This document shows, one piece after another, positions 1,989-60,420 of a stretch of DNA of 64,000 nucleotides (position 1 is its first letter; the number at the start of each line of letters is the position of its first letter). The notes under the pieces are model-generated. The model saw only the letters and a program-made list of their open reading frames with translations, was not told where the DNA came from and searched no databases. The translations under genes were made by a program, and so were the position numbers. Source of the DNA: Mobula birostris. Its lineage: Eukaryota. Location: the NCBI RefSeq assembly GCF_030028105.1, contig NC_092389.1:22245180-22309179 (forward strand), in the 5' to 3' direction.

Positions 1989-2230
1989 TTAGACCCAAGA
2001 GACTCTGTACATGCTGGAAATCTTGAGCAACACACACAAAACACTGGAAGTACTCAGCAGGTCAGTCAGCATCTATGGAGGGAAATAAACAACCAACATT
2101 TTAGGCCAAAACCATTCAGGATATGATCAAGTCCTGAAGTTGTGTCTTGGCCCAGAACATCAACTGCTCATTTCCCTCCATAAACTCTGCCTGACCTGCT
2201 GAGCTCCTCCAGTATTTTGTTGTGTTGCCT
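1989..2230. mobile_element. Short self-inverted Penelope-like (pLTR) insertion
   Basis: Two oppositely oriented copies of the repeat end, with degenerate hammerhead cores in the centre. 10-bp TSD attcgctatc at 1979-1988 and 2231-2240. Confidence 0.75.
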
Positions 2231-2454: not shown

Positions 2455-3070
2455 CATAACACACAAAATGCCAGAGGACCTCAGCAAGTCATCTATGGAG
2501 GTGAATAAACAGTTGACATTTTGGGCTGAGACCCTTCATCAGGACTAGAAATGAAGAGGGAAAAAGCCAGAATAAGAAGCTAGAAGGAGAGGAACTACAA
2601 GCGGGCAGGTGATAGGTGAGACCAGGTGAGGTGGGGGAGGGTGAAGTGAGAAGCTGGAAGGTGATAGATGCAAGAGGTAAAGGGCTGATGAAGAAAAAAA
2701 AACCTGAAATGAGGGGAAAGTGGACTATGGGAGCAAGGGAGCAATTACCATAAGGGGGGGGGGTGAAATTACCATAAGTTCGAGAAATTGATGTTCATGC
2801 CATCAGGTTGGAGGCTACCCAATGGAATATAAGGTGTTGCTCCTCTAACCTGAGTGTAGCCTCATCATAACAGTAGAGAAGGCCGAGGACTGACATATCA
2901 GAATGGGAATGTGAAAAATGGGAAGTATCAGCACTCTTGGTCACCGCCTTGTCCCATTTTTCTCCTTTCTTTTCCCTGCAACTTAATTTCCTAACTTTGG
3001 TCAGAGCCATTACCTCTGTTCATCTCTCCCTACATGCTGTCTGATTTGCTCAGCATTACCATAATTTTCT
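2455..3070 (-). mobile_element. Penelope-like element 3' fragment (GIY-YIG endonuclease C-terminus plus pLTR)
   Basis: ORF 2795-3010 encodes HSHSDMSVLGLLYCYDEATLRLEEQHLIF, PLE endonuclease C-terminus-like. It is followed by a pyrimidine-rich tract and a decayed hammerhead at about 2510-2546. Confidence 0.75.
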
Positions 3071-7312: not shown

Positions 7313-8931
7313 AAGTGGTATGCAAAAGTTTGGGCACCCCAGTCAAAATTTCTGTTACTGTGAATAGCTAAGCAAGTAAAAGATAGCCTGATTTCCAAAA
7401 GGCATAAAGTTAAAGATGACACATTTCTTTAATATCTTAAGCAAGATTTTTTTAAATTTCTATCTTTCACAGTTGCAAAATATCAGAAAAGGTACAGGGC
7501 CCGAAGCAAAAGTTTGGGCACCCTGCATGGTCAGTACTTAGTAACACCTCCTTTGGCAAGTATCACAGCTTGTAAATGCTTTCTGTAGCCAGCTAATAGT
7601 CTTTCAATTCTTGTTTGGGGGATTTTCGCCCATTCTTCCTTGCAAAAGGCTCCAAGTTCTGTGAGATTCTTGGGCCGTCTTGCATGCACTGCTCTTTTGA
7701 GATTTATCCACAGATTTTCGATGATGTTTAGGTTGGGGGACTGTGAGGGCCATGGCAAAACCTTCAGCTTGCATCTCTTGAGGTAGTCCATTGTGGATTT
7801 TGAGGTGTGCTTCGGATTATTATCCTGTTGTAGAAGCCATCCTCTTTTCATTTTCAGCTTATTTTTTTTTTTTTTACAGATGGTGTGATGTGTGCTTCCA
7901 GAATTTGCTGGTATTTAATTGAATTCATTCTTCCCTCTACCAGTGAAATGTTCCCCGCGTCACTGGCTGCAACACAAGCCCAAAGCATGATCAACCCACC
8001 CCCATGCTTAACAGTTGGAGAGGTGTTCTTTTCGTGAAATTCTGCACCCTTTTTGCTCCAAACATACCTTTGCTTATTGTGGCCAAAAAGTTCTATTTTA
8101 ACTTCATCAGTCCACAGGACTTGTTTCCAAAATGCATCAGGCTTGTTTAGATGTTCCTTTGCAAACTTCTGACGCTGAATTTTGTGGGGAGGATGCAGGA
8201 AAGATTTTATTCTGATGACTCTTCCATGAAGGTCATATTTGTGCAGGTGTCGCTGCACACTAGAACAGTGCACCGCCACTCCAGAGTCTGCTAAATCTTC
8301 CTGAAGGTCTTTTGCAGTCAAACGGGAGCTTTGATTTGCCTTTCTAGCAATCCTACGAGAGGTTCTCTCAGAAAGTTTTCTTGGTCTTACAGACCTCAAC
8401 TTGACCTCCACTGTTCTTGTTAAGTGCCATTTCTTAATTAGATTATGAACTGAGGAAACAGCTACCTGAAAACACTTTGCTATCTTCTTCTAGCCTTCTC
8501 CTGCTTTGTGGGCATCATTTATTTTAATTTTCAGAGTGCTAGACAGCTGCTTAGAGGAGCCCATGGCTGCTGATTGTTGGGACAAGGTTTGAGGAGTCAG
8601 GGTATTTATAAAGCTTTGAAATTTGCATCACCTGGCCTTTCCTAATGATGACTGTGAATAAGCCAAAGCCCTAACAAGCTAATTAAGGTCTGAGACCTTG
8701 GTAAAAGTTATCTGAGCTCAAATCTCTTGGGGTGCCCAAACTTTTACATGGTGCTCCTTTCCTTTTTTTCCACTCTAAAATTGTACAAAACAAAAATAAT
8801 ACACTAATCTTGCTTAAAATGTTGAAAAGAATGTTTCATCTTTAACTTTGACTTTTGGAGATCAGTTCATCTTCTACTCACTTAACTATTCACAGTAACA
8901 GAAATTTTGACCAAACTTTTGCATGGCACTG
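7313..8931 (-). mobile_element. Near full-length Tc1 (DD34E) transposon with IR/DR termini
   Basis: TA flanks at 7311-7312 and 8932-8933. Inverted repeats of about 210 bp, with the internal direct repeat caaaagtttgggcaccc (about 7323 and 7507; reverse copy about 8730). Confidence 0.92.
7531..8564 (-). pseudogene. Tc1 transposase pseudogene
   Basis: ATG at 8562-8564 (MGSSKQLS...). Motifs WTDEVKIELFG, TVKHGGG, QQDNNPKH, WPSQSPNLNIIENLW and KGGVTKY*. In-frame stops and a frameshift at the poly-T run near 7862-7875. Confidence 0.92.
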
Positions 8932-11125: not shown

Positions 11126-11333
11126 TCAAAAACAGGAGAAAATCTGCAGATACTGAAAATCCAAAGCAACACACACAAAATGCTGGAGGAATTCAGCCGG
11201 CCAGGCAGCACCTCTGGGGGGGAAAAAGTAAACAGTTGACAGTTTGAGCTGAGACTCATCAGTCCTGATGAAAGGACTTGGCCTGAAATGTTGACTGTTA
11301 CTCTTTTCCATGGTACTGCCTGGCCTGCTGAGT
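11126..11333. mobile_element. Short self-inverted Penelope-like insertion with hammerhead motif
   Basis: 11-bp TSD tccaagtctga at 11115-11125 and 11334-11344. Inverted arms, with cagtc-CTGATGA...GAAA-tgtt-gactg at 11260-11297. Confidence 0.8.
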
Positions 11334-13652: not shown

Positions 13653-14253
13653 TTGAATGAAATATACAAGAAAAAAAATCACAAATTTGTCCTGAAAATA
13701 GGTTCACATTTTGAAATAATGGCAAGCATCCTGTAGCTACATTTAAGGCCAGGAGTAGCCTGTGAGTAGCAAAATCTATACTTTCCACTAATTACTTCTC
13801 AAGTCTTCTTTCCATCCATCCATGAAGGTTGAAGATGGAATAGCAAGTGAATAATCTGTGGGAGTTAAACGCACAAATCAATGCGTCAAACAACTCAGTG
13901 TAATATCCAGTTTCTGATTTTTGCTCCAAACAGCCAAAGCTCCACTTTGTAATGTTATATTTACACCTTGTTTTGTGATATTTGATGGACTATATGAGCG
14001 AAGTATTTTTATTTGGCTTTTAGTTTTTGGTTCAAGCTGTAAATCTGACTGTTAGCACTGTTTATTGTATTCAGACTGTGGATTTGTGTTAGACAAAGGC
14101 ATACATATAAAGGGCAAGTCAATGGCTTGCCCTCACTCGGCCAATGCAAGTTTGGAACAGCCAGCCAAGAGGCAGTTTTTAAAAAAAATTGTTAAAACTT
14201 ATTAAATTTGCTGGTGAACGCAGCAGGCCAGGCAGCATCTCTAGGAAGAGGTG

Positions 14254-14291
14254 CAGTCAACGTTTCAGGCCAAGACCCTTCGTCAGGACTA
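14254..14291 (-). ncRNA. Minimal type I hammerhead ribozyme motif (antisense arm)
   Basis: Minus strand reads tagtc CTGACGA A gggtcttggcct GAAA CGTT gactg. Confidence 0.65.
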
Positions 14292-14802
14292 ACTGAAGGA
14301 AGAGCTAGTAAGAGATTTGAAAGTGGGAGGGGGAGGGGGAGATCCAAAATGATAGGAGAAGACAGGAGGGGGAGGGATGGAGCCAAGAGCTGGATAGGTG
14401 ATTGGCAAAGGGGATATGAGAGGATCATGGGACAGGAGGCCTAGGGAGAAAGACGGGGGGGTGGGGCGAACCCAGAGGATGGGCAAGGGGTATAGTCAGA
14501 GGGACAGAGGGAGAAAAAGGAGAGAGAGAAAGAATGTGTGTACAAAAATAAATAACGGATGGGGTACGAGGGGGAGGTGGGGCATTAGCAGAAGTTAGAG
14601 AAGTCAATGTTCATGCCATCAGGTTGGAGGTGACCCAGACGGAATATAATCCTGATCCTGTCCCATGATCCTCTCATATCCCCTTTTGCCAATCACCTGT
14701 CCAGCTCTTGGCTCCATCCCTCCCCCTCCTGTCTTCTCCGATCATTTTGGATCTCCCCCTCCCCCTTCCACTTTCAAATCTCTTACTAACTCTTCCTTCA
14801 GT

Positions 14803-14840
14803 TAGTCCTGACGAAGGGTCTCGGCTTGAAACGTCGACTG
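14803..14840 (+). ncRNA. Minimal type I hammerhead ribozyme motif in PLE pLTR
   Basis: tagtc CTGACGA A gggtctcggctt GAAA CGTC gactg: stem I agtc/gact, conserved core, stem II, and palindromic ACGT with a GUC triplet. Confidence 0.7.
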
Positions 14841-17169
14841 TACCTCTTCCCAGAGATGCTGCCTGACCTGCTGCGTTCACCAGCCACTTTGACATGTGTT
14901 GCTTGAATTTCCAGCATCTTCAGAATTCCTGTTGTTTGCGTTAAAACTTATTGTTCAACTAGCTTTGATTCTAATCTTTAATTGAACTAAACACACAATT
15001 GTTAATCTCAGTGAGGACTGAAATGCTTTCCCTTCCATCTGCCAATGTTGTAGATTTCTTTTCTCATTTTGAAATGTTCACAGAAAACCTGTCTCGGGTA
15101 AATCCAAAGCAACACTTCACATTTCAGTTGCAGGACAGTTTGCTTTCTGCTTCAGCTTAGGAGTTGAAAGGAGCCAAGCTCTAAACACTACCAATGCTAG
15201 ACTAAGGTATTTGGCAAAGCTCCAGTTCAACAGCATACCTTAATTTTGCCATCATTATTTGACCTGCTGTGGTGCATGACAGATTCCAATCCAGACCATC
15301 TCTGTTCTTGTGATACTGAGCTTGACAATTCTTTAGCCTTAGGAACACATAAATCACATTTCAGTCATTATTTGTAACAGCTTCCAATTTAGTGTTAATC
15401 ATGCCTAGCATAAAGCAGATTTTAGGTTCTGCAATAGGTCACAAACAGGAATATACACCTGGCTCCAAATAAATTGAAATTGCTCGCCATGAGGGATCTC
15501 TGCTCAGCTTGAATTAACTGTTGTACTTGTGGTTAATGATGCTCTAAAACATTTCAAAATTGCAATACCTTTTCTGAAGGAGCATCATACCTCACAGGTT
15601 CAAAATTTAGATCAAAAAGCAGCAACAAATGTCACATTTGCAAAAATACAGTTGAATAATTCAGCAAGAACTGGATTAATCCATTCAGGCAAATAATGTG
15701 GCCTTGTATATAATGAACCTGTTCAACAACTAAAAAAAAGACTTATTTGTTATTGGGGAAATTAACAAAAAAACTATAATGAAACGTGCCTCAATTTTAT
15801 GCAAATACAGTATACACCAGCTATAAAAAGACAACCAAGTACAAGATTAGACTCGAATGTAGATCCCTATACTATGATAATATAAATCTCTACATCCTGA
15901 TAATTCCTTAAAGGTCTTCACAGCCATAAGAAATTAGATTGCAGCCTATAAATTACATCACACTGGTAATTTTCAAACAGGGACCAAGGAGGACCTGACC
16001 TTCTAAAAAGAAACAATAAAGCATAGAATTCTATCATATGATGTAGTTTCTCCTGCGACCCAGCAGAGATGACCAAAAAAAAATCTCAGCCGCATTGTGG
16101 ATAGCCACTCCTGCCATCATTAGAATAAAAACATAATTACTTTAAAAATATTTATTTCTTTGATATAATTTCTACAAATAGTTAGGTCACCGTGGAATAC
16201 TTAGATTTTTTTTTAATTTGAGAAGGCATTTCATTGAATTGTGGCAGCTCAGACAATCCCTTGAACCGTGGTTGCTCATGTTTTGAAGGAAATCCCACAG
16301 ATTATTGCCGGGTTGGATGCTCTAGGAATTTGATGGAATGTCGATTTATAACAGAGATCAGAGGGTACAAGAATAAATGATGATTAGTGTGCTTGAATTG
16401 TAAAGGTATGGGAACTGTCATGGGCTCCAAATCTGGTATCACAAAATTAGGAGCCAGAGCAAAGCAGTTAGCAAGACGTCATGCTTGTCAATGAGAAACA
16501 AGGACAGAGAAAGAAATAGAACAGACTGAAACAAGTCAATGTGAATATACTATTGACTGCAATATCTAATGATTGTACTCAGGAGGAAAAGAGGAAAGAA
16601 AAGAATTAAAAATTTTTAAAAACCTACTGGAACGTATTACCATTTGCAAAGTTAAGCATCTTAACTGTTCTTTTTACGTGTCTCCAAGGAAGGAACATTA
16701 AAACAATCCTTGTTATTATTTACCAACTGTTTTTATTATAAATAACTATATACAATTTTATCTTTCATATAATATATAACAGTTGGTTATATACAGTATA
16801 CATATCTGCAGTGGAATTCCACCCATTTCTTTCTATTCACAGGAGGGTAAAATTCAAAGGTCAATGTGGAGTATACATTTTGCTATTCACAATTTGCAAG
16901 ACATCGCTTCCTCACTACAAATAGTCATTTTTTGTGCGCTGCAATAACAAAGTGCCCATTTTCTTGACATTATTTTGCCAGTGAATTCTGAACTTGTTTA
17001 CGCATTGCTTTCCTGGACATTATTGTGATTGCTGGTACACTGAGAGTCCCAATCAAGCACTCAGTGAGTCAGAATTGACCTGTGGTCCAGTAGATTTGTT
17101 GCTTGCATTATTTTATCAAGGCTGAAGGCTCAGTTCATTTGTTAACACTCCTTTTCGGATGGCTCCCAC

Positions 17170-18194: not shown

Positions 18195-18387
18195 GCAACA
18201 CACAAAGTTGCTGGTGAACGCAGCAGGCCAGGCAGCATCTCTAGGAAGAGGTACGGTCGACGTTTCGGGCCGAGACGTCGACTGTACATCTTCCTAGAGG
18301 TGCTGCCTGGCCTGCTGCGTTCACCAGCAACTTTGATGTGTGTTGCTTGAATTTCCAGCATCTGCAGAATTCCTCCTGTTTGCGTTT
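18195..18387. mobile_element. Palindromic minimal Penelope-like insertion
   Basis: Near-perfect inverted arms of about 70 bp meeting inside the hammerhead stem II, with the CUGANGA core absent. Flanking direct repeat aaaaaaaaatgaaa. Confidence 0.85.
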
Positions 18388-19513: not shown

Positions 19514-19990
19514 CAGTGCAAAAGTCTTAGACACACTTATCTAGCTAGGGTGCTTAAGACAGTTGTACAGTTCTGTATTTGACAACGTGGAGCAGAGAGT
19601 GAGTTTATAAATCTGGTGTGAGTGAAGGATGTTGGGAATGGGGAGGATAGTGCATTGCAGGAGGGGTGTGGGACAGGTGACAGAGAAAGAGTGCCTGGAA
19701 CAGGGGATGGTGTGGGTGCCGACACATTCAGACCTAAGACACCAGGCAAGGTCATTTGATTTCAAATATTTGGTTTATAGATCACTAGAGAATGTCTCTC
19801 TAGTGCTTCCTACTCTCTCCTCTTTCTCTTCCCTTTTTCTCAACCGTGATTCCCCTCTCTCTACCCTGTTTCCCACTCTCAGTCCACAATAGAGACCCAT
19901 ATCAGAATCAGGTTCATCATCTTTCACTTCATGAATTTTTTTTTGTGTGGAAACAGTACAGTTCAAAACAAAAAATACAACAGTACTGTG
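19514..19990. mobile_element. Tc1/mariner-type MITE (same family as 5490-6621)
   Basis: gtgcaaaagtcttag terminus. The body is the reverse complement of about 6190-6600. Confidence 0.7.
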
Positions 19991-20261: not shown

Positions 20262-20492
20262 CGCAAACAACAGGAATTCTGCAGATGCTGGTGTGAGTGA
20301 AGGATAATGGGAATGGGGAGGATAGTGCATTGCAGGAGGGGCATGGGACAGGTGACAGAGAAAGAGTGCCTGGAACAGGGGATGGTGAACAGGGTCCTGA
20401 CGAAGGGTCTCGGCCTGAAACGTCGACTGTACCTCTTCCTAGAGATGCTGCCTGGCCTGCTGCGTTCACCAGCAACTTTGATGGGCGTTGCT
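20262..20492. mobile_element. Penelope-like insertion containing a captured 100-bp local sequence and a hammerhead motif
   Basis: 15-bp TSD atcttctgttaagtg at 20247-20261 and 20493-20507. Segment 20288-20387 duplicates 19613-19712. Hammerhead at 20394-20429. Confidence 0.85.
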
Positions 20493-22142: not shown

Positions 22143-22337
22143 TAAACAACACATACAAAATGCTGGAGGAACTCAGCAGGCCAGGCAGCATCTATGGAAA
22201 AAGGTACAGTCAGGGTTTAGACCCAAAACATCGACTGTACTCTTTTCCATAGATACTGCCTAGCCTGCTGACTTCCTCCAGCATTTTGTGTGCATTGCTT
22301 GGATTTCCACCATCTGCAGATCTTTTCTTGTTTGTGA
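22143..22337. mobile_element. Short self-inverted Penelope-like insertion
   Basis: Inverted arms. 12-bp TSD tcagatagagtg/tcagatagggtg (22131-22142, 22338-22349). Confidence 0.75.
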
Positions 22338-23404: not shown

Positions 23405-23985
23405 ATTGAGTGGAGCACCAACACAGAGGTTGTGCACAAGAAGGGCCAGAATTGCCTTTACTTCCTGAGGAGACTGAGGTCCTTTGGAGTATGCAAGCCT
23501 CTCCTTCACACGAGCTACAAGTCCGTTGTCACCAGAACAGTCTTCTATGTGGTGGTGTGCTGGGGCAATGGCATCAACATGGATGATGCCAACAGGCTCA
23601 ATAAACTGATTAGAAATGCTGGCTCTGCTGTAGGAGTCAAACTAGGCACATTGGAGGCCATGGTAGAACAACAGAAAAGGCTGGCAATTCTGGCCAAGGT
23701 TTCTCATCCTCTGCATGCCATCTTGGCTGAACAGAGCAGCACTTTACATAACAGACTAAGACAACTGTGTTGCTCCAAAGAGTGCTATATGAGGTCATTC
23801 TTACCCTCGGCTATTAGTCTCTATAATGTGTCGATCTATAGCCAGGGAAGTGATAACTCCCTCCTGTTAGACTGTTTGAGGCAACCTTTTTTTTATTCTT
23901 TCTTATTTCTCTTCCAATATTTATATATTTGTGCACTTGTAATGCGACTGTGACATTGTAATTAGCTGTGGGATCAACAAATTAT
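23405..23985 (+). mobile_element. Rex1/Babar-like LINE 3' fragment
   Basis: ORF 23432-23953 encodes KKGQNCLYFLRRLRSF...WGNGI...HPLH...SFLPSAISLYN. Confidence 0.85.
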
Positions 23986-24320: not shown

Positions 24321-24813
24321 NNNNNNNNNNNNNNNNNNNNNNNNNNNNNNNNNNNNNNNNNNNNNNNNNNNNNNNNNNNNNNNNNNNNNNNNNNNNNNNN
24401 NNNNNNNNNNNNNNNNNNNNNNNNNNNNNNNNNNNNNNNNNNNNNNNNNNNNNNNNNNNNNNNNNNNNNNNNNNNNNNNNNNNNNNNNNNNNNNNNNNNN
24501 NNNNNNNNNNNNNNNNNNNNNNNNNNNNNNNNNNNNNNNNNNNNNNNNNNNNNNNNNNNNNNNNNNNNNNNNNNNNNNNNNNNNNNNNNNNNNNNNNNNN
24601 NNNNNNNNNNNNNNNNNNNNNNNNNNNNNNNNNNNNNNNNNNNNNNNNNNNNNNNNNNNNNNNNNNNNNNNNNNNNNNNNNNNNNNNNNNNNNNNNNNNN
24701 NNNNNNNNNNNNNNNNNNNNNNNNNNNNNNNNNNNNNNNNNNNNNNNNNNNNNNNNNNNNNNNNNNNNNNNNNNNNNNNNNNNNNNNNNNNNNNNNNNNN
24801 NNNNNNNNNNNNN
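24321..24813. other. Assembly gap (N run)
   Basis: Run of N. Confidence 1.
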
Positions 24814-24948: not shown

Positions 24949-25196
24949 NNNNNNNNNNNNNNNNNNNNNNNNNNNNNNNNNNNNNNNNNNNNNNNNNNNN
25001 NNNNNNNNNNNNNNNNNNNNNNNNNNNNNNNNNNNNNNNNNNNNNNNNNNNNNNNNNNNNNNNNNNNNNNNNNNNNNNNNNNNNNNNNNNNNNNNNNNNN
25101 NNNNNNNNNNNNNNNNNNNNNNNNNNNNNNNNNNNNNNNNNNNNNNNNNNNNNNNNNNNNNNNNNNNNNNNNNNNNNNNNNNNNNNNNNNNNNNNN
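24949..25196. other. Assembly gap (N run)
   Basis: Run of N. Confidence 1.
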
Positions 25197-42637: not shown

Positions 42638-43285
42638 ATACGAGAGATTCTGCAGATGCTGGAAATTTTAAGCAACATACACAAAATGCTGGAGGAATGT
42701 AGCAAGCCAGGCAGCCTCTGTAGAGGGGCATAAACAGCTGATGTTTCAGGTTGACACCCTTCATTAGGACTAGAAAGTTAAGTGGCAGAAGCCAGAATGA
42801 GGAGGAGGAAAGTAGTACAAGACGGCAGGTGACAGGTGAGGCAAGGTGAGAAGATGGGTGATGAATAAGAAGCTGGGAGATGATAGGTGGAAGAGGTAAG
42901 AAGGCTGAAGAAGCAATCTAATTGGAGAAGATAGCAGACCATTCAAGAAAGGGAAGGAGGGGGAAACCAAAGGGAAGTGATGGGCAGGTGTGAAGAAGTG
43001 GAAGGGTGAGAGGGCAAACAAAATGTGGAATGGAAAAAAAAGAGAAACTAAGAGGGGTGTAATTATCCAAAGTTAGAGAAATTGATGTTCATGTTATCAA
43101 GTTCAAGGCTACGTGGACAAATTATGAGGCATTGCTCCTCCAGCCAGAGTGTGACTTCATCATTGTGGCAGCAGAGGTGGCCATAGACAGACATGTCAGA
43201 ATGGGAATGAGAAGTTGAATTGAAATGGTTAGTCAATGGGAGAACCTGCCTCATGCGGTGGACAGAGCAAAAGTTCTTAATGTTC
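42638..43285 (-). mobile_element. Penelope-like element 3' fragment
   Basis: ORF 43063-43287 encodes NHFNSTSHSHSDMS...LEEQCLI...MNINFSNF. pLTR with a decayed hammerhead at about 42735-42772. Confidence 0.8.
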
Positions 43286-49709: not shown

Positions 49710-51400
49710 ATTTTCAGGATCTGGGTGTTGCTAGCATCCTTAATTGCTATTGAGGTGGTAGGGAACGTCTTTCTTGAACCACTGCAGCTCTTCTGATAAA
49801 GGATCACCCATAGTAGCGTTGGGAGAGGTCTCCAAGATTTATACTCACTGACAAAGGGCAAGCAATACATTTCCAAATTAGAAATGTACAAATTGTAGGG
49901 GTAGATGCCGGTAATGGCTCTCGCTAGTGCCTGTTACACTTGCCCTTTTTCTTGATGGGAGAGTTTTCAGGTTCAAGGGACAATATCAAAGTAGTGTAGA
50001 CGAATAACAGCCCTACTTTTTGTCAATGCTGCAGCTAAGGTATCAAGGTGATGGATTGGGTTATTAAAGCTTCAATCTGCAAGTGAAAAGTATTCCCTCA
50101 TATCCTCAACTTGGATCTTGTCGCTGATAGAAAGGATCTAGGGTGTCAGAGAGTGAGCGATTTGAAGGGTTCCCATTTTTTTGACCTGCTCACAAAGCCA
50201 CAGTATTTATGTGGTTAATCCAGTCAAAGCCTCATCAATGATGAGGCCTCAGGATAATGCTGATAGAGGACTCGGTGGTAATGCCTTTGGAGGTCAAGAT
50301 TTTGGGGGTTCTCTGCTTGACAATTCTGGCACAAGTGTTACTTGCCCACTTTTCAATGTTCGGCATGTCTTTCTGCTAGCAGGCATGGACTGTTTCATAA
50401 GTGAGGAACTATAAAGGGAAATGGAAATTGTGGATTAAGTAAATATCCTCACTCCTGATTTTATGGTGGAAAGATGGTGAATAATGAAGAGGATCTGAAA
50501 TTTTCCTGCAATTGTGTGCTGGGCTTCGATGGTTGAACTTCAACATCCACAACCTTTGTCCTTCTTATGAACTATGATTTCATCTACTGAAATGATTTCC
50601 CTCTAATACCTATACATTTCAGTTTCACCATTTTCCCTTGATTCCCATACTTGGTCAAATAATGACTTTGATGGCAAGGGGAATCCCTCTCACCCTGGAA
50701 GAACCCAGTGTGACAAGTAGTATCTGGAGGAAGAAAGGCATCATTGACATTTCAGGTTGAAAAACTGCACTAGGACACTTAAGGTGTTTCTAGCATCTGC
50801 AGCCTCATATCTCTGGAATCCCTCTTACCTCATCTCTGTAATTTATCTCTTTGGTTGATATTTGGATGAAGTCCATGACAACATCCAGAGCTGAGTGACC
50901 CTAACAAAATTCAAACTGGGCATTGGCAAGCACAGCATCGATCAGTAAATATTGTTCAATAGTACCATCAACAGCACATTCACAAATTCTGGATGCCGAG
51001 GGATATCAACAGGGGAAAAAAAACACATGGCGACTAAAATGATGAAGGTGGCCTGTTGAGAGAAAAATGTGTTGGGAGGCATTAAAGAACAAAATTAAGG
51101 TGACTCAGAGGGGTGGTCATAAAGCTCTTGCAGACAGGATTAAAGAACATTAAAATATTAAAAGAATAACCAAAGAGAAAGAAATGTGCATTACAGACCG
51201 AAGTGGCAATCTGTTTATGAGGCAGAAAGCATAGCTAAATTCCTGACTGAATACATGAGTACTGTTCATTGGTTTTCACAAAGAGACCTTGAATTCTCCA
51301 ATTACAACGAAGGTGTAGGCTAAAGTCAATTACAGGTGTCCATGAATAAATGGGAGGTACCCAATGCCTTGGTAGGATGAAAGGTGGGATGCAAGGTAAA
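49710..51400. mobile_element. Ancient LINE (CR1/L2-group) remnants
   Basis: Patchy similarity to LINE 3' regions (tcttcttgaaccactgcag..., cagtatttatgtggttaatccagt...). No intact ORF. Confidence 0.35.
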
Positions 51401-53827: not shown

Positions 53828-56607
53828 AGGCCAACTTATACTTCTGCATCGAATCTACGCCGCAGGTACAGCATAGCCGCGTACCCTATGCCGTAGCCTG
53901 ACGCGCACCTCCCCAAAAACGCAACTACGCGTCATGGCGACGCAGATTGCAACAACCCTGATTGGTCCGCTTGGTAGCAATGCATTTTCTCCTCCACATT
54001 TCCATATAACCATATAACAATTGCAGCACGGAAACAGGCCATCTCAGCCTTTCCAGTCCGTGCCGAACTCTTACTCTCACCTAGTCCCACCGACCTGCAC
54101 TCAGCCCATAACCCCCCATTCCTTTCCTGTCCATATAGTTGTCCAGTTTAACATTAAACAACAACATCAAACCTGCCTCAACCACTTCTGCTGGAAGCTC
54201 ATTCCACTCTCTGAGTAAAGAAGGTCCCCCTCATGTTACCCCTAAACTTTTGCCCCCTAACTCTCAACTCATGTCCTCTTGTTTGAATCTCCCCCACTCT
54301 CAATGGAAAAAAGCCGAACCACGTCAATTCTATCAATCCCCCTCATAATTTTAAATACCTCTATCAAGTCCCCCCTCAACCTTCTACATTCCAAAGAATA
54401 AAGACCCAACTTGTTCAACCTTCCTCTGTAACTTAGGTGATGAAACCCAGCAAACATTCTAGTAAACCTTCTCTGTACTCTCTCTATTTTGTTGACATCT
54501 TTCCTATAATTTGGTGACCAAAACTGTACACAATACTCCAAATTTGGCCTCACCAATGCCTTGTACAATTTCAACATTACATCCCAACTCCGAAACTCAA
54601 TGCTCTGATTTATAAAGGCCAGCATACCAAAAGCTTTCTTCACCACCCTAGCCACATAAGATTCCACCTTCAGGGAACTATGCACCATTATTCCTAGATC
54701 CCTCTGTTCTACTACATTCTTTAATGCCCTACCATTTACCATGTATGTCCTATTTTGATTAGTCCTACCTAAGTGTAGCACCTCACATTTATCAGCATTA
54801 AACTCCATCTGCCTTCTTTCAGCCCACTCTTCTAACTGGCCTAAATCTCTCTGCAAGCTTTGAAAACCTACTTCATTATCCACAACTCCACCTATCTTAG
54901 TATCATCTGCATACTTTCTCATCCAATTTACCACCCCATCATCCAGATCATTAATGTATATGACAAATCACATTGGACCCAGTACAGATCTCTGAGGCAC
55001 ACCACTAGTCACCGGCCTCCAATCTGACAAATAGTTTTCCACCACCACTCTCTGGCGTCTCCCATCCAGCCACTGCTGAATCCATTTTGCTACTTCAATA
55101 TTAATACTAACGATTGAACCTTCCTAACCAACCTTCCCTGTGGGACCTTGTCAAAGGCCTTACTGAAGTCCATATAGGCAACATCCACCGCTTTACCCTC
55201 ATCAACATTCCTAGTAACCTCTTCAAAAAATTCAATAAGATTTGTCAAACATGACCTTCCACGCACAAATCCATGTTGACTGTTCCTAATCAGACCCTGT
55301 CTATCCAGATAATTATATATACACCATCTCTAAGAATACTTTCCATCAATTTACCCACCACTGACTTCAAACTCACAGGCCGATAATTGCTAGGTTTACT
55401 CTTAGAACCCTTTTTAAACAATGGAACCACATGAGCAATACGCCAATCCTTCGGCACCATCCCCGTTTCTAATGACATTCGAAATATTTCTGTCAGAGCC
55501 CCTGCTATTTCCACACTAACTTCTCTCAATGTCCTAGGGAATATCCTGTCAGGACCCAGAGACTTATCCACTTTTATATTCCTTAAAAGCTCCAGTACTA
55601 CTACTACTTTAATCATCATAGTTTCCATAACTTCCCTACCCATTTCCCTTATCTTACACAATTCAATATCCTTCTCCTTAGTGAATACCGAAGAAAAGAA
55701 ATTGTTAAGAATCTCCCCCATCTCTTTTGGCTCCGCACATAGCCGTCCACTCTGATTCTCTAAGGGACCAATTTTATCCCTCACTATCCTTTTGCTATTT
55801 ATATAACGGTAGAAACCCTTGGGATTTATTTTCACCTTACTTGCCAAAGCAACCTCATATCTTCTTTTAGCTCATCTAAATTTCTTTCTTAAGATTCCTT
55901 TTACATTTTTTATATTCCTCGAGCACCTCATTTACTCCATGCTGCCTATATTTATTGTACCTAACAGGAACATAAAGATTCTGTACTCTCAAATTTTCAC
56001 CTTTAAATGACCTCCATTTCTCTATCACATCCTTCCCATAAAACAAATTGTCCCAATCCACTCCTTCTAAATCCTTTCGCATCTCCTCAAAGTTAACCTT
56101 TCTCTAATCAAAAATCTCAACCCTGGGTCCCGATCTATCCTTCTCCATAATTATATTGAAACTAATAGCATTGTGATCACTGGACCCGAAGTGCTCCCCA
56201 ACACAAACCTCCGTCACCTGACCTATCTCATTCCCTAACAGGAGATCCAACACTGCCCCTTCCTTCATTGGTACCTTTACGTATTGCTGCAAAAAAACTA
56301 TCTTGCACCACCTCCTCCGACGTCCTCTCTCTTTTCTGCATTGCAGTAATTTCAATAAAAGTAACTCTTGTTCAACATTTATTAGCTCCAACTCCAACAT
56401 GATGCGCTCAGTTTCAGTCACCATTGTTTGAAGTACACAAAGAAACTCAACACGAAGAAACTCAACGCAGTGGCATAGAAACCCCACCGCCAACTACCGC
56501 TTTAGCAGTGAATTGCAGAGCAACACAGACACACCAACGCGTAAGTATAAATGCTCACAATGGTGTAGGCTATGGTGTAGAGCCGACGCAGTAGTATAAA
56601 TCAACCT
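53828..56607 (-). mobile_element. PIF/Harbinger-like DNA transposon whose interior is replaced by a CR1
   Basis: TIRs aggccaacttatacttctgcatcg / cgacgcagtagtataaatcaacct|TAA. The minus-strand ORF start MVTETERIMLELELINVEQELLLLKLLQCRKERGRRRRW resembles a Harbinger transposase N-terminus. Confidence 0.65.
54002..56303 (-). mobile_element. CR1 LINE, 5'-truncated (end of endonuclease, RT, 3' tail)
   Basis: Encodes LDLLL...GSSDHNAISF, PLFKKG...NYRPVSL, KYADDTK, LVRPNLEYCVQFWSP and RRLRGDLIEVFK. The 3' tail is (ttatatgg)2. Confidence 0.95.
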
Positions 56608-59149
56608 TAAGTCCAAACAGCATTCTTAAAACACATTTCAAACTCAGAGGATTTCAATCTGAAACATTTCCAAATTACAAACCAAACCATTACTTAAGCA
56701 CAAAGCAAGTGCACACTACAGCAAATGTGACGGATTGGATCCACCAGTTTATTTAACTTATGAACTAAATCATCTGCAAAGAGCTTGTATGTGGATTCTT
56801 GCTTTATATCTGTTCCACTAGAAAGCTGTTGCAGAATTTATGATAAACCACATTATTAAGCATTCAGATACTTAGCACATCCATTGGACGAGTTAAGGAT
56901 TCTGAACATGATATCCAATTTGTTTGCCTTAAGTTGGATTCTACCAAGACCAGAATTTTAATCTGTGGGAAATAGCATTAGCACAACCACAGAAATCAAT
57001 AATTTAAACTAATCCATCAGTTTCCAGATTAAAAGAAAGCTTCAAGTTCAATCACCAGTTCAAAGACTTGCTACTCGTGTGCTAAGATTATAATGTTTTC
57101 CAAACTGCAAGGCTATCTTTTCTAGGAAACATTACCAAGTGAAGTAGACTGTAAAAAGAAGTTGGCACAGTTGAGCATGTCCATTGATTCCACTCCTTTA
57201 CAAACTAAAAGCAGCATAACATTGCATGAGAACACAAGACCAACTGTCAGTCAATGGATTCAGTCAACTGAAATCTCATTACAGTCGCACAGCTTCAAAA
57301 CCCTCACAGCTAGCCTTAGCTAATTCAAATTCTACTCAACATGTAACCTTCATAGTTGCAGAAAAAAAACATTTACAGACATTGGAAATTAGGCATGCTA
57401 CTTTTCCATTTTGGTTTCATTTTAAGTGTATAGAAGTCATATATTTCTCACAGTAGACACTCGCTCCTTCAGATTATTTTTAGACTGTTCAAGAAAAGCT
57501 GTTTAATTAGGCTCCCCCCCAACCCTTTATTTTCAAGGCACAGCATTATATGCAAATCAAAAGCAATTGAGGCAAGCCACTTCAGCTGTCAGCTCTTAAA
57601 TCAAGTTATCGAATAAACTGATAATGATCAGAAAAGTACACGAGGAAATGAACTAAAATCTGCATCTCACTGCAAAAATAGAATCATTTTGATATAATTG
57701 TCAGGACGAATCTAAGTGCATGGGAGATTGTCATCTTTGGCCCAATAATGCGCATTTTGGGAACCACAATCTTAATTTAGCTATGAAGACTTCTTTGTAA
57801 TTACTTTCCAGTCACAAAATGTGACTTATGGACAGGTTTGACCCGTGGATTATGCTATTGATAAAATAAGCTAGAAACTTGAGAGATCAAAGAAAATGAA
57901 AATAGTTCTTAAATATTTTGGAAAAATTGAAAATTCTACACCTCAAGGTGCAGTGGCAGGTTGACCACTATTCAGTGAGTGTTGGTTTGGAGATAGTGAT
58001 GTGTAAGCAGTGTTCTTATGATCCCAGCGTCAATCAAACCCTGATTTTCTTTGCTCAGACTTGGCAGCTATAACATTTGTTGCTTTGGATCAGAGTCCCA
58101 GAAGATCCCACTCTGAAACCTCTTCAGCTAACACTCTTCCTTGAGGATGTTCCTTGTGATTCACTTTTTCCAGCCAAAACTTTGGCTGATCCATTCTCCC
58201 ATCCTTGCTGCACCGTGAGAATGCATTAAGCAGATGTGGGCCAGGTCAGTACTGAGACAGGAGACAAACAACAAATCAACAAGAATCTTAGTAACATTAT
58301 ATTTTTTTGTTAGCATATGCACTATGTTGGTCAACTATCAACATATGTTTGTGGCCAGTGTCAAATTCTGTTTAATCATTAGTCCGGGACATTTATAAAA
58401 TGGAAGTCAATGGGAAATAATGCTCTCCATTATTTCAGACTCAGATGATGCTTTGAAGGGCACAGCAGTGTATTTAAAGAAATTGTGTGCTGGGGAACCA
58501 CACAAGCTTGGATGCACAAAATGACATAGCAATTTGACGAGTTTAAAACTGGTCTTTCTTAATAGACTGAATATTATTGTCTCAGTAAATTTCTCCAATC
58601 TTTCCACCCAGACCATTACCTCTTATCATTTCAAACTATTAGCATATTTGTTTTAGGCACCATAAATTGTCCCGCTTTTACTTCAGAGAAATTCTTTGCT
58701 GCAACATTGAATTTTAGCAATAGTGTCTGCGTTCTGCTCAATATACAGATGACAACTGATGAAACATAAACCACTTGAGAAATTAACTCTGCTCACTCTC
58801 ACTGTTTCTCCCCACGGGTGTTGCCTCACCTGCATTTTCAGTCTTTTGTTCCCCAATCTAACATTTCAGCTTCTTTGAGGATCTTAAAGCTCCCTATTGT
58901 GTAAAGAACTATCAGTAATCAAAGCAACAAGACATCAATAATGTAACTACAATATAGCACACATTCTGTTGAACGGAATCCTGAAATAAGGACTGAAACA
59001 CATTTGAACTGTCCCTGATATTTACACTACATTTCCATATAAAATGTTTTCTTATATACAAAAATAAAACCTTAAAACATAATCTTTACTTCACAATGCT
59101 TACCCACATGCAGGAGTTATTTGACACCAGCTGAGGCAATTACTCACAA

Positions 59150-59900
59150 GCATATCCTTTGGCCTTATTTATTGCATGTACTGCTCCCAATGCTCCCTTC
59201 TACATCAGCTAGGCAGGATGTAGGTTGGGCAACCAGCTTGCTGAACGCCTATTCTTCACCAGCTGCAGTTATCTAGAGCTCCCAGTAGCCAGCCATTTTA
59301 ATTCTCGTCCCTATTTCCACACTGGCATATCTGCCCTTTGCCCTCTATAATGTCAAGAGCAGGCTAAATGCAAACCTGAGAATAGCACCTTATGTTCTGC
59401 CTGACTAGTGTACATCCCAGCAGCATAAACATTGAATTCTCCAATTTCAGGTAAACTGCTCCCCCTTCTACCCTTTTTTCTCTGTTCCTGATCTATTAAA
59501 CACCTTTCACACCATCTCTTTGCCTTTCTCCATCCTCTCCAGCTGCCCATTACCTACCACTCCCCCACTACAACCGTCCACCCTCCCCACTTCACCTCCC
59601 CTTGATTCCATGGTTTATCTTCCTTTTGGAATCCATCATCTTCAGCCCTTTGTCACTTCCGCTGTTCTGACATTATTTGGACTCTCCTCCTTCCCCATCT
59701 ACTTATCATCTCTCCTTACCTGGATCTACCGATGCCTGCTAGCTCTTGCTCTATCTCTTTTCTCCACATTCTTAAGCTGGCCATCTCCCCTCTTTCAGTT
59801 CAGAAGGATCTTGACCCAAAGTGTTGTCTGTCCATTTCCTCCACAGATGTTGCTTGACCTGCTGAGCCCCTCCAGCATCTCGTGTCACTACAGATTCCAA
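59150..59900 (+). mobile_element. Penelope-like element 3' fragment, degraded
   Basis: GIY-YIG C-terminal relic (ccagtagccagccattttaattc...aacattgaattctccaatttc), a pyrimidine-rich tract and the pLTR end. Confidence 0.7.
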
Positions 59901-60420
59901 CAACTGCCGTTGCACTTCTCCTTACTTGACTTTGATCAAGTGTTAACACTTCTTCTCAAATTAGAAAGTTGGTACTTGGCCTATGGGATAAGTTAAGGTA
60001 GGAGATGAATACAAAAACTGGGGTGATGCATCATGTACCTTACAGTTTGGACAGAGTATGTGATCAAAAATTTATTAAAAGGGGAAGTTCTGTTCATTCT
60101 ATTTTGTACATTCACCAACAGGATTTAAAACTTAGTTCCTTAGCAACATATTCATTAATTTATTTCTAATACTGTTATTCATTGTGGAAAATGTGATTAA
60201 AAACAGCAAATCAGTCATGGAATCTAATACGTAATTGAAAGCATGCAACAGTATAATCTATTGCTACACAATCAGGAAACGAATAACCACTATAGGAATT
60301 TAGAAAACAATCCAATTCCCTTCACAGGTGTTGTTCAAACCACTTCTCCAGTAGTTTTTTTTTGTTCTAGATTCCAGCATGTGCATGCAATCTCATCTCC
60401 AGGAATGCATCGTCTCAAAA

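What the first reader, a model, noticed from the sequence alone, without database searches (positions are those of the whole stretch)
14204..14939. The dominant short repeat of this genome region is a hammerhead-ribozyme-bearing Penelope-like pLTR
Seen: a ~38-nt motif recurs at least ten times in the window. The best copies are 14803-14840 (+), 14254-14291 (-), 20394-20429 (+) and 11260-11297 (+). Decayed copies lie at about 2130, 2510, 22208, 34710, 42735, 45762, 59797 and 63460. The consensus is (c/t)agtc-CTGA(T/C)GA-A-gggtctcggccc-GAAA-CGTC-gactg. The flanks pair (stem I), CUGANGA and GAAA are the hammerhead core, and gggt/gccc closes stem II. Stem III is reduced to a palindromic ACGU followed by the cleavage nucleotide. 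Longer copies link the motif to a GIY-YIG-like C-terminus. Established: Penelope-like elements carry minimal type I hammerheads that are proposed to cleave as dimers, and an extra nucleotide between A9 and G10.1 is tolerated in natural hammerheads. Inference: these introns are seeded with self-cleaving-RNA motifs on both strands, with most copies inactivated by CpG decay (cccGAAA to cccAAAA, CGTC to TGTC/CATC). PLE hammerheads are known in general. Whether this chondrichthyan family has been characterised cannot be determined here.
Basis: partly seen in the sequence, partly recalled or inferred. Interest (0 to 1): 0.85.

Follow-up and report, generated by a model that had tools for sequence, protein, structure and literature searches.

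The report
Penelope-like retroelement ends with hammerhead motif
The repeat is the 3' end of a Penelope-like retrotransposon of a ray genome that carries a minimal hammerhead-ribozyme motif, a known kind of element seen here as decayed copies.

Summary
Three pass a strict minimal-hammerhead descriptor, against 0 hits in 200 random sequences. Every stretch of the window with self-BLAST multiplicity of 4 or more belongs to this family.

Four copies continue upstream into the C-terminus of an ORF. Its homologues in Hypanus, Mobula and shark genomes carry reverse transcriptase plus GIY-YIG domains. The family is therefore an EN+ Penelope-like element, probably Neptune-like.

14204-14939 is one insertion, flanked by a 13-bp target duplication. 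It consists of two inverted 5'-truncated 3' ends. One arm has the optional 35-nt tail extension, which is the published PLE architecture.

Several things are not shown:
- Self-cleavage was not tested.
- Stem covariation shows no signal among the window copies.
- No Rfam hammerhead model matches.
- No direct pLTR pair is present in the window.

The reads were contigs only, so RNA ends could not be seen. The scan had already noted this family on other DNA of the same genome: 400 notes hold both words.

This is a new member of a known kind and of low interest. One lead remains: arm 5' ends cluster at the hammerhead's 5' edge.

The parts
14191..14203 (.). Left copy of the 13-bp target-site duplication
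   Evidence: Identical 13-mer at 14191-14203 and 14940-14952. Laid depth jumps from single-copy to repeat level at 14204.
14204..14252 (-). Tail of the longer (-) copy. It ends early and lacks the 35-nt extension.
   Evidence: Alignment to the (+) arm. In one search, loose ends at 14204 show other copies continuing into the longer tail.
14253..14291 (-). Minimal hammerhead motif of the (-) copy. The core is intact, with U at position 17.
   Evidence: Strict descriptor hit at 14259-14286(-); pattern hit.
14292..14584 (-). 3' UTR of the (-) copy
   Evidence: Lies between the stop codon and the motif. Its translation matches the read-through ends of P0020 and P0034.
14585..14649 (-). Last about 20 codons plus the stop of the PLE ORF (endonuclease C-terminus). 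14649/14650 is the inversion junction.
   Evidence: Translation; tblastn with P0034. Loose ends at 14647/14649 show other copies continuing into the ORF.
14650..14802 (+). 3' UTR part of the inverted, shorter (+) copy. It contains TACTAAC (14784-14790), a pyrimidine run, and AG just before helix I.
   Evidence: Inverted repeat 14194-14413 / 14681-14900, 92% complementary; sequence read.
14803..14841 (+). Minimal hammerhead motif of the (+) copy. Core boxes at 14808-14814 and 14828-14831; predicted cleavage after C14835.
   Evidence: The family majority is C at 14826 (98% of laid depth), and C at 14827 is seen in 37%.
14842..14939 (+). Tail in its long form, including the optional extension of about 35 nt (about 14904-14939)
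   Evidence: Two classes of 3' end among arms, at about 14902-14904 and about 14937-14939 in family coordinates. Depth falls back to single copy at 14943.
14940..14952 (.). Right copy of the target-site duplication
20392..20430 (+). Best-preserved hammerhead motif of the window. It lies in the insertion 20262-20492, which has a 15-bp target duplication.
42643..43278 (-). 5'-truncated copy: endonuclease C-terminus, 3' UTR, decayed motif (42734-42772), long tail
2464..3019 (-). 5'-truncated, frameshifted copy: endonuclease remnant, 3' UTR, decayed motif (2509-2547), tail
59128..59907 (+). Old 5'-truncated copy: endonuclease domain remnant, 3' UTR, decayed motif (59793-59831), tail
   Evidence: tblastn with P0034 residues 261-417; nhmmer.

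Best explanation
Window 14204-14939 is one retrotransposition event of an endonuclease-positive Penelope-like element (PLE). The family is probably of the Neptune type, and the host is a ray genome. The insertion consists of two inverted, 5'-truncated 3' ends joined head to head at 14649/14650 and flanked by a 13-bp target duplication.

Each arm ends in the family's conserved 3' module. That module is a 39-nt minimal type I hammerhead motif followed by a tail of about 65 nt. One arm alone also has the optional extension of about 35 nt.

The same module, mostly 100-240 bp long and often as TSD-flanked inverted pairs, is the dominant repeat of the window.

**Shown:** the sequence anatomy, the link to the PLE ORF, the single-event structure, the abundance, and the CpG decay.

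**Inferred from published work on other PLEs:**
- In active master copies the motif lies in the terminal repeat. It can self-cleave the element's RNA after GUC only weakly, as a dimer through the palindromic ACGU or with help from the element's protein.
- The two classes of 3' end reflect two internal start sites of reverse transcription.
- The inverted arms reflect priming on both cut DNA strands.

The copies in this window are neutral fossils. 3 of the 13 complete motifs keep an intact core.
For: **Motif and significance.** (0 chance hits; 22 arms, two subfamilies).

**ORF link.**
- The stop-free peptide from 43066-43260(-) finds 33 proteins at E<=1e-3. Each match lies at the protein's C-terminus.
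- P0001, P0016, P0015, P0034 and P0042 have GIY-YIG hits at E 1.5e-4 to 8e-3. P0015, P0042, P0079 and P0100 have RVT_1.
- P0020 contains the YIDD box and a C-x5-C-x2-C motif before the endonuclease.
- P0020 has 327 homologues at E<=1e-10, among 3078 candidates. The closest are from Hypanus sabinus, Mobula hypostoma and sharks, and some have precomputed PF00078 and PF01541.
- tblastn places these proteins upstream of four motif copies.

**Architecture.**
- 6 of 6 inverted pairs have 11-15 bp target duplications.
- In all 6 pairs, one arm ends at the long-tail site and the other at the short site or earlier.
- Craig et al. 2021 (PMC8557442, passages) describe exactly this: 5' truncation, an adjacent inverted 5'-truncated copy, and a 30-40 bp tail at one end.
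- Frangieh et al. 2024 (PMC11167929, main text) show two RT start sites and cleavage and extension of both strands.

**Abundance.** 89,274 and 162,895 contigs of two DNA runs lie on 14204-14942, while the flanks are at single-copy depth.

**Conservation.** Between subfamilies the motif is 72-82% identical, the upstream 120 nt 42-67%, and the tail 58-72%.

**Motif features.** They match those listed in PMC4209133 (text read).
Against: - No Rfam hammerhead model matches: not at gathering score over the whole window, nor at E<=10 on 14000-15100, nor on the 81 nt around the best copy.
- The 13 window copies show no covariation. 80.9% of cells are paired, against 81.1% in shuffles; 351 of 500 shuffles are as high.
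- All three intact copies have G-U rather than G-C at 10.1-11.1.
- Predicted minimum-energy folds of monomer and dimer do not give the hammerhead. Instead they pair GACG with CGUC.
- The motif plus tail folds no better than shuffles, with z about 0.
- Pfam does not recognise the window's own peptides. The GIY-YIG hits in homologues are all below the 22.6-bit cut-off.
- No full-length copy, no RT of this family and no direct pLTR pair is in the window.
- Published PLE minimal hammerheads cleave poorly in vitro (PMC4209133). In the anole element they were not needed for insertion in vitro, and no RNA-seq reads ended at the cut site (PMC11167929).
Confidence: 0.85

Rival explanations
1. The short copies (motif plus tail, 100-140 bp) are not random 5' truncations. 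They are a discrete short unit: either a non-autonomous derivative moved in trans by the PLE, or run-off cDNAs of an RNA whose 5' end lies at the 5' edge of the hammerhead (a transcription start or a processing site).
For: - 7 of about 14 short arms in the window begin within family positions 14804-14808: 2+, 2-, 11+, 11-, 20+, 34+ and 45-.
- 11 of the 15 best-supported joints listed by read laying have their (+) side at 14794-14810. Several are symmetrical fold-backs about 14801-14807 (824 further joints were not shown).
- 386 and 446 contigs diverge from the window just before 14804 (loose ends).
- The sequence just upstream reads TCAGTT in subfamily A and CTAGTC in subfamily B. From memory, these resemble initiator elements.
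- The preprint 10.64898/2026.07.22.740005 (abstract and section 14 read) derives retrozymes from PLE pLTRs.
Against: - Long copies carry the same module continuous with the 3' UTR and ORF.
- Other arms start elsewhere: about 14826 for both arms of insertion 18, 14911 for 20-, and 14650 for 14+.
- Helix I is self-complementary, so junction positions are ambiguous by 4-5 nt.
- The sample is small and the class was defined after looking.
- The listed joints are a selected subset.
- No tandem head-to-tail units are seen in the window.
Confidence: 0.2
2. The motif keeps hammerhead-like sequence but is not a working self-cleaver in this family. It is conserved for another reason, such as protein binding, template recognition, or overlap with the start of the ORF.
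For: - In the anole Poseidon element, hammerhead mutants did not change insertion in vitro, cleavage needed the protein, and no RNA-seq reads ended at the cut site (PMC11167929, main text).
- Cleavage of minimal PLE hammerheads in vitro is low (PMC4209133).
- Naiad PLEs thrive without the motif (PMC8557442, passages).
- There is no Rfam match and no covariation here.
Against: - All catalytic core positions are kept in the young copies.
- The motif is the best-conserved segment between subfamilies, despite five CpG sites in the inferred ancestral motif (four of them scored as CpG columns; the C11.1-G12 site survives as CG in no window copy).
- C3/G8 mutants abolished RNA cleavage in the anole element, and the double mutant partly restored it (PMC11167929).
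Confidence: 0.25
3. The hammerhead resemblance is a chance match inside an unrelated repeat.
For: The motif is short, and Rfam models do not match.
Against: - 0 descriptor hits in 200 random sequences against 3 observed.
- All the extra PLE-specific features are present: the bulged nucleotide, the palindromic 15.2-16.2 pair, and the position near the 3' end of an RT/GIY-YIG element.
Confidence: 0.02

Closest known systems
Minimal type I hammerheads (min-HHR) of metazoan Penelope-like elements (Cervera & de la Pena 2014, PMC4209133)
   Same: - CUGANGA and GAAA boxes and the GUC site.
[quoted passage not shown]
- Helix III reduced to a palindromic ACGU with no loop.
- A short helix I of 4-5 bp.
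- Many dispersed single copies, and pairs 100-700 bp apart on opposite strands.
- The sequence just upstream resembles a 3' splice site that ends at helix I, as reported for D. virilis.
   Different: - Helix II is only 4 bp with a tetraloop, whereas Schistosoma and Drosophila examples have 6-8 bp.
- The host is a cartilaginous fish. No such host is named in the text I read, and the paper's supplementary lists were not seen.
- Activity is untested.
Poseidon PLE of Anolis carolinensis (PAc; Frangieh et al. 2024, PMC11167929)
   Same: - A hammerhead about 100 nt upstream of the insertion's 3' end.
- Two discrete 3' ends 30-40 nt apart (the 'tail').
- AT-rich or simple target sites.
- Structures consistent with priming from both DNA strands.
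   Different: - The homologues here carry a Cys motif before the endonuclease, typical of Neptune/Nematis rather than Poseidon.
- In PAc the start codon sits at the start of helix II. Here the corresponding triplet is AAG, and the ORF start could not be located.
Non-LTR retrozymes of animals (tandem hammerhead repeats giving circular RNAs; PMC7229834 seen in a search listing only; preprint 10.64898/2026.07.22.740005)
   Same: Type I hammerheads with a weak helix III, related to PLE terminal repeats.
   Different: The copies here are dispersed and inverted. None is a head-to-tail tandem array.

Membership tests
PLE minimal hammerhead (min-HHR) | Core boxes CUGANGA and GAAA, with a UH cleavage site | tested here: met
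   Intact in 3 of 13 complete motifs. The others are broken, mostly at CpG sites.
PLE minimal hammerhead (min-HHR) | Helix I and helix II flanking the core, with G10.1-C11.1 | tested here: inconclusive
   Helix I is 4-5 bp and helix II 4 bp. All three intact window copies have G-U at 10.1-11.1. C at 14827 is read in 37% of laid depth across the family.
PLE minimal hammerhead (min-HHR) | [quoted passage not shown] | tested here: met
   A at 14815 and ACGU at 14831-14834. The criteria are taken from the text of PMC4209133.
PLE minimal hammerhead (min-HHR) | Compensatory changes in the helices across families | tested here: inconclusive
   No signal in 13 copies of one family. These are neutral decay products, so the test has little power here.
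PLE minimal hammerhead (min-HHR) | Self-cleavage after position 17 | not testable with these tools
   The reads were contigs only, so no molecule ends could be seen. No bench assay was possible.
Rfam hammerhead families | Match to a curated covariance model | tested here: not met
   No hammerhead hit at gathering score, nor at E<=10 on 1101 nt or on 81 nt. This is expected if the models require helix III, which I recall but did not check.
Penelope-like element, EN+ | [quoted passage not shown] | tested here: inconclusive
   The window holds only endonuclease C-terminal remnants. Homologues have RVT_1 above the cut-off, and GIY-YIG at 16.9-22.4 bits against a cut-off of 22.6. Some hits carry precomputed PF01541.
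Penelope-like element, EN+ | 5' truncation with an adjacent inverted copy, a 30-40 bp tail at one end, and a target duplication | tested here: met
   6 of 6 inverted pairs have a TSD. In each, the long tail is on one arm only.
Penelope-like element, EN+ | pLTR: direct partial-tandem repeats flanking the ORF | tested here: not met
   No direct pair around an ORF was found in the window. The module is what would form a pLTR in a tandem copy, but that is not shown here.
Neptune/Nematis clade of PLEs | Zn-finger-like CX2-5CxxC motif between RT and endonuclease | tested here: met
   C-x5-C-x2-C in P0020, P0034 and P0100, and C-x4-C-x2-C in P0001. The criterion comes from passages of PMC8557442. No tree was built, and the motif is not preserved in the window itself.
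Non-LTR retrozyme | Head-to-tail tandem units, each with a hammerhead | tested here: not met
   Arms are dispersed or inverted, and none is tandem.

The most novel reading that the evidence does not exclude
The head-to-head junctions and 5' ends of the short copies are not random. They pile up at the hammerhead.

Many arms start at the 5' edge of helix I. Because helix I is self-complementary, a common junction type can equally be read as one arm starting exactly at the predicted cleavage product (G1.1) and annealing through helix I to a second cDNA.

If genome-wide mapping confirmed a peak at G1.1, the tens of thousands of fossil insertions would be an in vivo record that hammerhead-cleaved RNA serves as template. 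That is evidence which RNA-seq failed to give in the anole study. If the peak is at the 5' edge instead, it marks a discrete RNA 5' end, either a transcription start or a splice-related end, and defines a short run-off unit.
Probability: 0.2. Interest if true: 0.6.

Novelty: new member of a known kind. Interest (0 to 1): 0.25.

Why it matters
It documents that a very abundant repeat of a ray genome is the hammerhead-bearing end of a Penelope-like element. This is useful for repeat annotation and for masking. It also warns that a 'ribozyme' call here is a sequence match in dead copies.

The family's abundance and its many TSD-flanked inverted pairs make it good material for studying how PLEs integrate: two start sites, priming on both strands, and where cDNAs end relative to the ribozyme.

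The biology itself (PLEs carry minimal hammerheads) has been known since 2014.

Tried and rejected
- **Rfam scans** gave no hammerhead hit.
- **Thermodynamic folding** did not help.
  - Folds of monomer and self-dimer gave rod-like structures, not the hammerhead. I consider this uninformative, because nearest-neighbour models do not capture the core.
  - Motif plus tail had z about 0, so there is no support for a specially stable tail hairpin.
- **Covariation** on 13 window copies gave no signal. The high pairing relative to the slid controls is circular, because the structure was derived from these sequences.
- **Pfam on the window's own stop-free peptides** found nothing.
I therefore could not see a pLTR-ORF-pLTR copy, the ORF start, or other species' motifs.
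- **Read laying** served contigs only, including the runs guessed to be RNA. Expression and cleavage ends could not be judged. One guessed-RNA run also covers the unique left flank, so it may hold DNA or pre-mRNA.
- **Splicing as the source of the 96-bp segment in insertion 20.** I rejected this because the source copy at 19617-19712 has no donor-like site at its end and the left joint shows a 4-nt microhomology. Template switching fits better.
- **Cleavage-site ends in the window.** Insertion 18 turns at the GGCC palindrome of helix II, and insertion 22 is too decayed to parse. Neither supports nor refutes the idea.
- **Literature.** Searches found no paper describing this chondrichthyan family's hammerhead. 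The 2026 preprint includes one unnamed chondrichthyan species.
The species lists of PMC4209133 and of the preprint, which may include cartilaginous fishes, were not seen.
- **Orthology of the insertion in organism B.** Its contigs reach only 25 nt into the element, fewer than the 31 needed, so this is not claimed.
Full report
**Observation**

The region 14100-15050 was read directly.
- A 28-nt core pattern occurs 4 times in the window with up to 3 mismatches, against 0.00 expected in 100 shuffles.
- My own strict descriptor required CUGANGA, an optional bulge, helix II of 3 bp or more, GAAA, a palindromic insert, UH, and helix I of 4 bp or more. It finds three copies: 14808-14835(+), 20397-20424(+) and 14259-14286(-). 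It finds none in 200 first-order Markov sequences.
- nhmmer with 14780-14939 finds 22 arms at E<=1, 17 of them at E<0.01.
- Aligned, these 17 fall into two subfamilies that differ mainly in the tail.
I found a few more: 2089-2127(-), 11229-11267(-), partial motifs in 18262-18284, and a weak one at 50695-50782.
- In a self-BLAST of the window (99 HSPs; 4458 bases with any self-hit), all 10 stretches with multiplicity of 4 or more belong to this family. 'Dominant short repeat' is therefore correct.
- The window has 39.4% G+C and a CpG observed/expected ratio of 0.25.

**What the family is**

On the strand that carries the sense motif, four copies continue upstream through a 3' UTR of about 250-300 nt into the end of an ORF. 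These are 2464-3019(-), 14204-14649(-), 42643-43278(-) and 59128-59907(+).

Pfam does not recognise the window peptides themselves. I therefore searched with a stop-free 65-residue piece, 43066-43260(-).
- It finds 33 proteins at E<=1e-3 among 1.84 billion representatives. In each case the match is at the protein's C-terminus.
- The hits are gene models from Hypanus sabinus, Leucoraja erinacea and Rhinoraja longicauda. Several are chimeras of host genes with the repeat.
- Pfam gives GIY-YIG at E 1.5e-4 to 8e-3 in P0001, P0016, P0015, P0034 and P0042. All are just under the 22.6-bit cut-off; the best is 22.4 bits.
- Pfam gives RVT_1 above its cut-off in P0015, P0042, P0079 and P0100.
- P0020 contains the YIDD box, a C-x5-C-x2-C motif, then the GIY...YIGET endonuclease.
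- P0020 has 327 homologues at E<=1e-10, among 3078 candidates. The closest are from Hypanus sabinus, Mobula hypostoma (81%), Rhincodon, Stegostoma and Chiloscyllium. More distant ones are in corals and echinoderms. Some carry precomputed PF00078 and PF01541.
- The read-through ends of P0020 and P0034 match the translated 3' UTR of the 14204-14649 copy. The same family therefore lives in myliobatiform rays.

The family is an EN+ Penelope-like element. The Cys motif before the endonuclease is the feature that Craig et al. 2021 (PMC8557442, passages read) give for Neptune/Nematis as opposed to Penelope/Poseidon. I built no tree, so 'Neptune-like' is an inference.

**Anatomy of 14204-14939**

An identical 13-mer lies at 14191-14203 and at 14940-14952. 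Laid depth jumps from single copy (about 2-11) to repeat level exactly between 14204 and 14942.

Inside it:
- The (-) copy, 14204-14649, runs from the last about 20 codons of the ORF through the 3' UTR and the motif (14253-14291) to a short tail.
- The (+) copy, 14650-14939, starts in the 3' UTR and runs through the motif (14803-14841) to the long tail.
- The shared parts are 92% complementary.
- Loose ends at 14647/14649 show that other genomic copies continue into the ORF there, which confirms the inversion junction.

Five other inverted pairs in the window are also single events:
- 1992-2230
- 11126-11333
- 18195-18387
- 20262-20492
- 22143-22337

They have target duplications of 11-15 bp. 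Counting 14204-14939, that makes 6 of 6.

Arm 3' ends fall into two classes, at about 14902-14904 and about 14937-14939 in this copy's coordinates. In all six pairs one arm has the long end and the other the short end or less.

This is the published PLE architecture: heavy 5' truncation, an adjacent inverted 5'-truncated copy, and a 30-40 bp 'tail' at one end only (PMC8557442, passages). Frangieh et al. 2024 (PMC11167929, main text read) explain the tail by two internal start sites of reverse transcription. They also show that the anole element's protein cuts and extends both DNA strands, which would give head-to-head arms. Applying that mechanism here is inference.

**The motif as a hammerhead**

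Reading 14803-14841:

| Element | Sequence | Position |
|---|---|---|
| Helix I, 5' strand | TAGTC | 14803-14807 |
| Core box | CUGACGA | 14808-14814 |
| Unpaired A | A | 14815 |
| Helix II | 4 bp closing a tetraloop | 14816-14827 |
| Core box | GAAA | 14828-14831 |
| Inner pair of the ACGU palindrome | CG | 14832-14833 |
| U16.1, C17 | UC | 14834-14835 |
| Helix I, 3' strand | GACTG | 14836-14840 |

[quoted passage not shown] They also describe pairs of motifs 100-700 bp apart on opposite strands.
- The window's three intact copies have T at 11.1, giving a G-U pair. Across the family, C is read at 14826 in 98% and at 14827 in 37% of laid depth.
- Between subfamilies the motif is better kept than its surroundings, although it is rich in CpG: 72-82% identity, against 42-67% for the upstream 120 nt and 58-72% for the tail.
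- Decay is concentrated at CpG. In the 9 well-aligned arms there are 27 departures at 8 CpG columns, against 32 at the other 31 columns. Four rows with alignment shifts were dropped.

**Results against the hammerhead reading, or uninformative**

- No Rfam hammerhead model matches at any threshold tried.
- The 13 aligned copies show no covariation. 80.9% of cells are paired against 81.1 +/- 1.2 in shuffles, and the covariation score is 0.225 against 0.258. This is expected for neutral decay within one family.
- Minimum-energy folds do not reproduce the hammerhead.
- The module is no more stable than shuffles.
- All sequencing runs offered were contigs, so neither expression nor molecule ends could be judged.
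- Published data temper the functional claim. Minimal PLE hammerheads cleave weakly and only as dimers in vitro (PMC4209133). In the anole element cleavage needed the protein, was dispensable for insertion in vitro, and left no read ends in RNA-seq (PMC11167929).

**A lead beyond the finding**

Arm 5' ends are not spread evenly.
- In the window, 7 of about 14 short arms begin within 14804-14808, at the 5' edge of helix I.
- Of the 15 best-supported joints listed by read laying, 11 have their (+) side at 14794-14810. Several are symmetrical fold-backs about 14801-14807. A further 824 joints were not shown.
- Because the two strands of helix I are complementary, a joint such as 14254 to 14804, with 4 ambiguous letters, can equally be read as one arm starting at G1.1, the predicted cleavage product.
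- Other first readers noted such cases elsewhere in this genome. I could not settle the question with the window's few, partly decayed examples.
- Just upstream of helix I lie TACTAAC, a pyrimidine run and AG (14784-14801). The same elements appear in the low-agreement consensus of contigs that diverge before 14804. This recalls the D. virilis intron that ends at helix I (PMC4209133). The same letters also resemble an initiator, which is a recollection and was not tested.

**Comparison and novelty**

PLEs are reported in all vertebrate lineages, including a cartilaginous fish (PMC4350176, passages). Minimal hammerheads are reported in fish, coelacanth, frog and reptile PLEs (PMC4209133).

A 2026 preprint (10.64898/2026.07.22.740005; abstract, passages and section 14 read) finds retrozymes and Neptune/Poseidon PLEs in one chondrichthyan species that is not named in the text I saw. 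My searches found no description of this batoid family's motif. The supplementary lists were closed.

The scan itself holds 400 notes with both words for this genome.

**Verdict:** the feature is real and correctly interpreted. It is a new member of a known kind, of low interest apart from the junction lead.

Noticed in passing
window 20292-20387 and 19617-19712: The insertion at 20262-20492 carries, between its two PLE arms, a 96-bp copy (96% identical) of DNA lying about 675 bp upstream. The left joint has a 4-nt microhomology, and 6 unexplained letters precede the hammerhead. It looks like template switching during reverse transcription.
   Followed up: partly
window 14784-14801 (also upstream of the motifs at 2548-2565 and 42773-42790, minus strand): TACTAAC, a pyrimidine run and AG lie directly before helix I. 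This looks like a 3' splice site ending at the hammerhead, as reported for D. virilis Penelope. The same letters could also serve as an initiator.
   Followed up: partly
window 18203-18335: A near-perfect hairpin insertion (66-nt arms, 94% complementary, 1 nt between them). Its turn sits on the GGCC palindrome of helix II, as expected for snap-back self-priming of a cDNA.
   Followed up: partly
window 7531-8411 (-): A Tc1/mariner-type transposase remnant, with HTH_Tnp_Tc3_2 (E 3e-15) and DDE_3 (E 2e-10) in two adjacent ORFs.
   Followed up: no
window 54269-54934 (-) and 23432-23953 (+): A weak RVT_1 hit (E 0.003) and an ALKBH8_N-like hit (E 2e-4) in ORFs. They are probably other retroelement remnants. 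tblastn with the PLE proteins did not match them.
   Followed up: no
window 24321-24813 and 24949-25196: Two runs of N. They were left untouched. The long 'ORFs' listed across them are artefacts.
   Followed up: no
proteins P0008, P0004, P0001, P0036, P0038: Annotated host proteins of rays end in, or contain, PLE endonuclease fragments. Examples are neuromedin-U receptor 1, an ATP synthase subunit C3-like isoform, and a 'mucin-2' isoform. The repeat seems to contaminate gene models.
   Followed up: no
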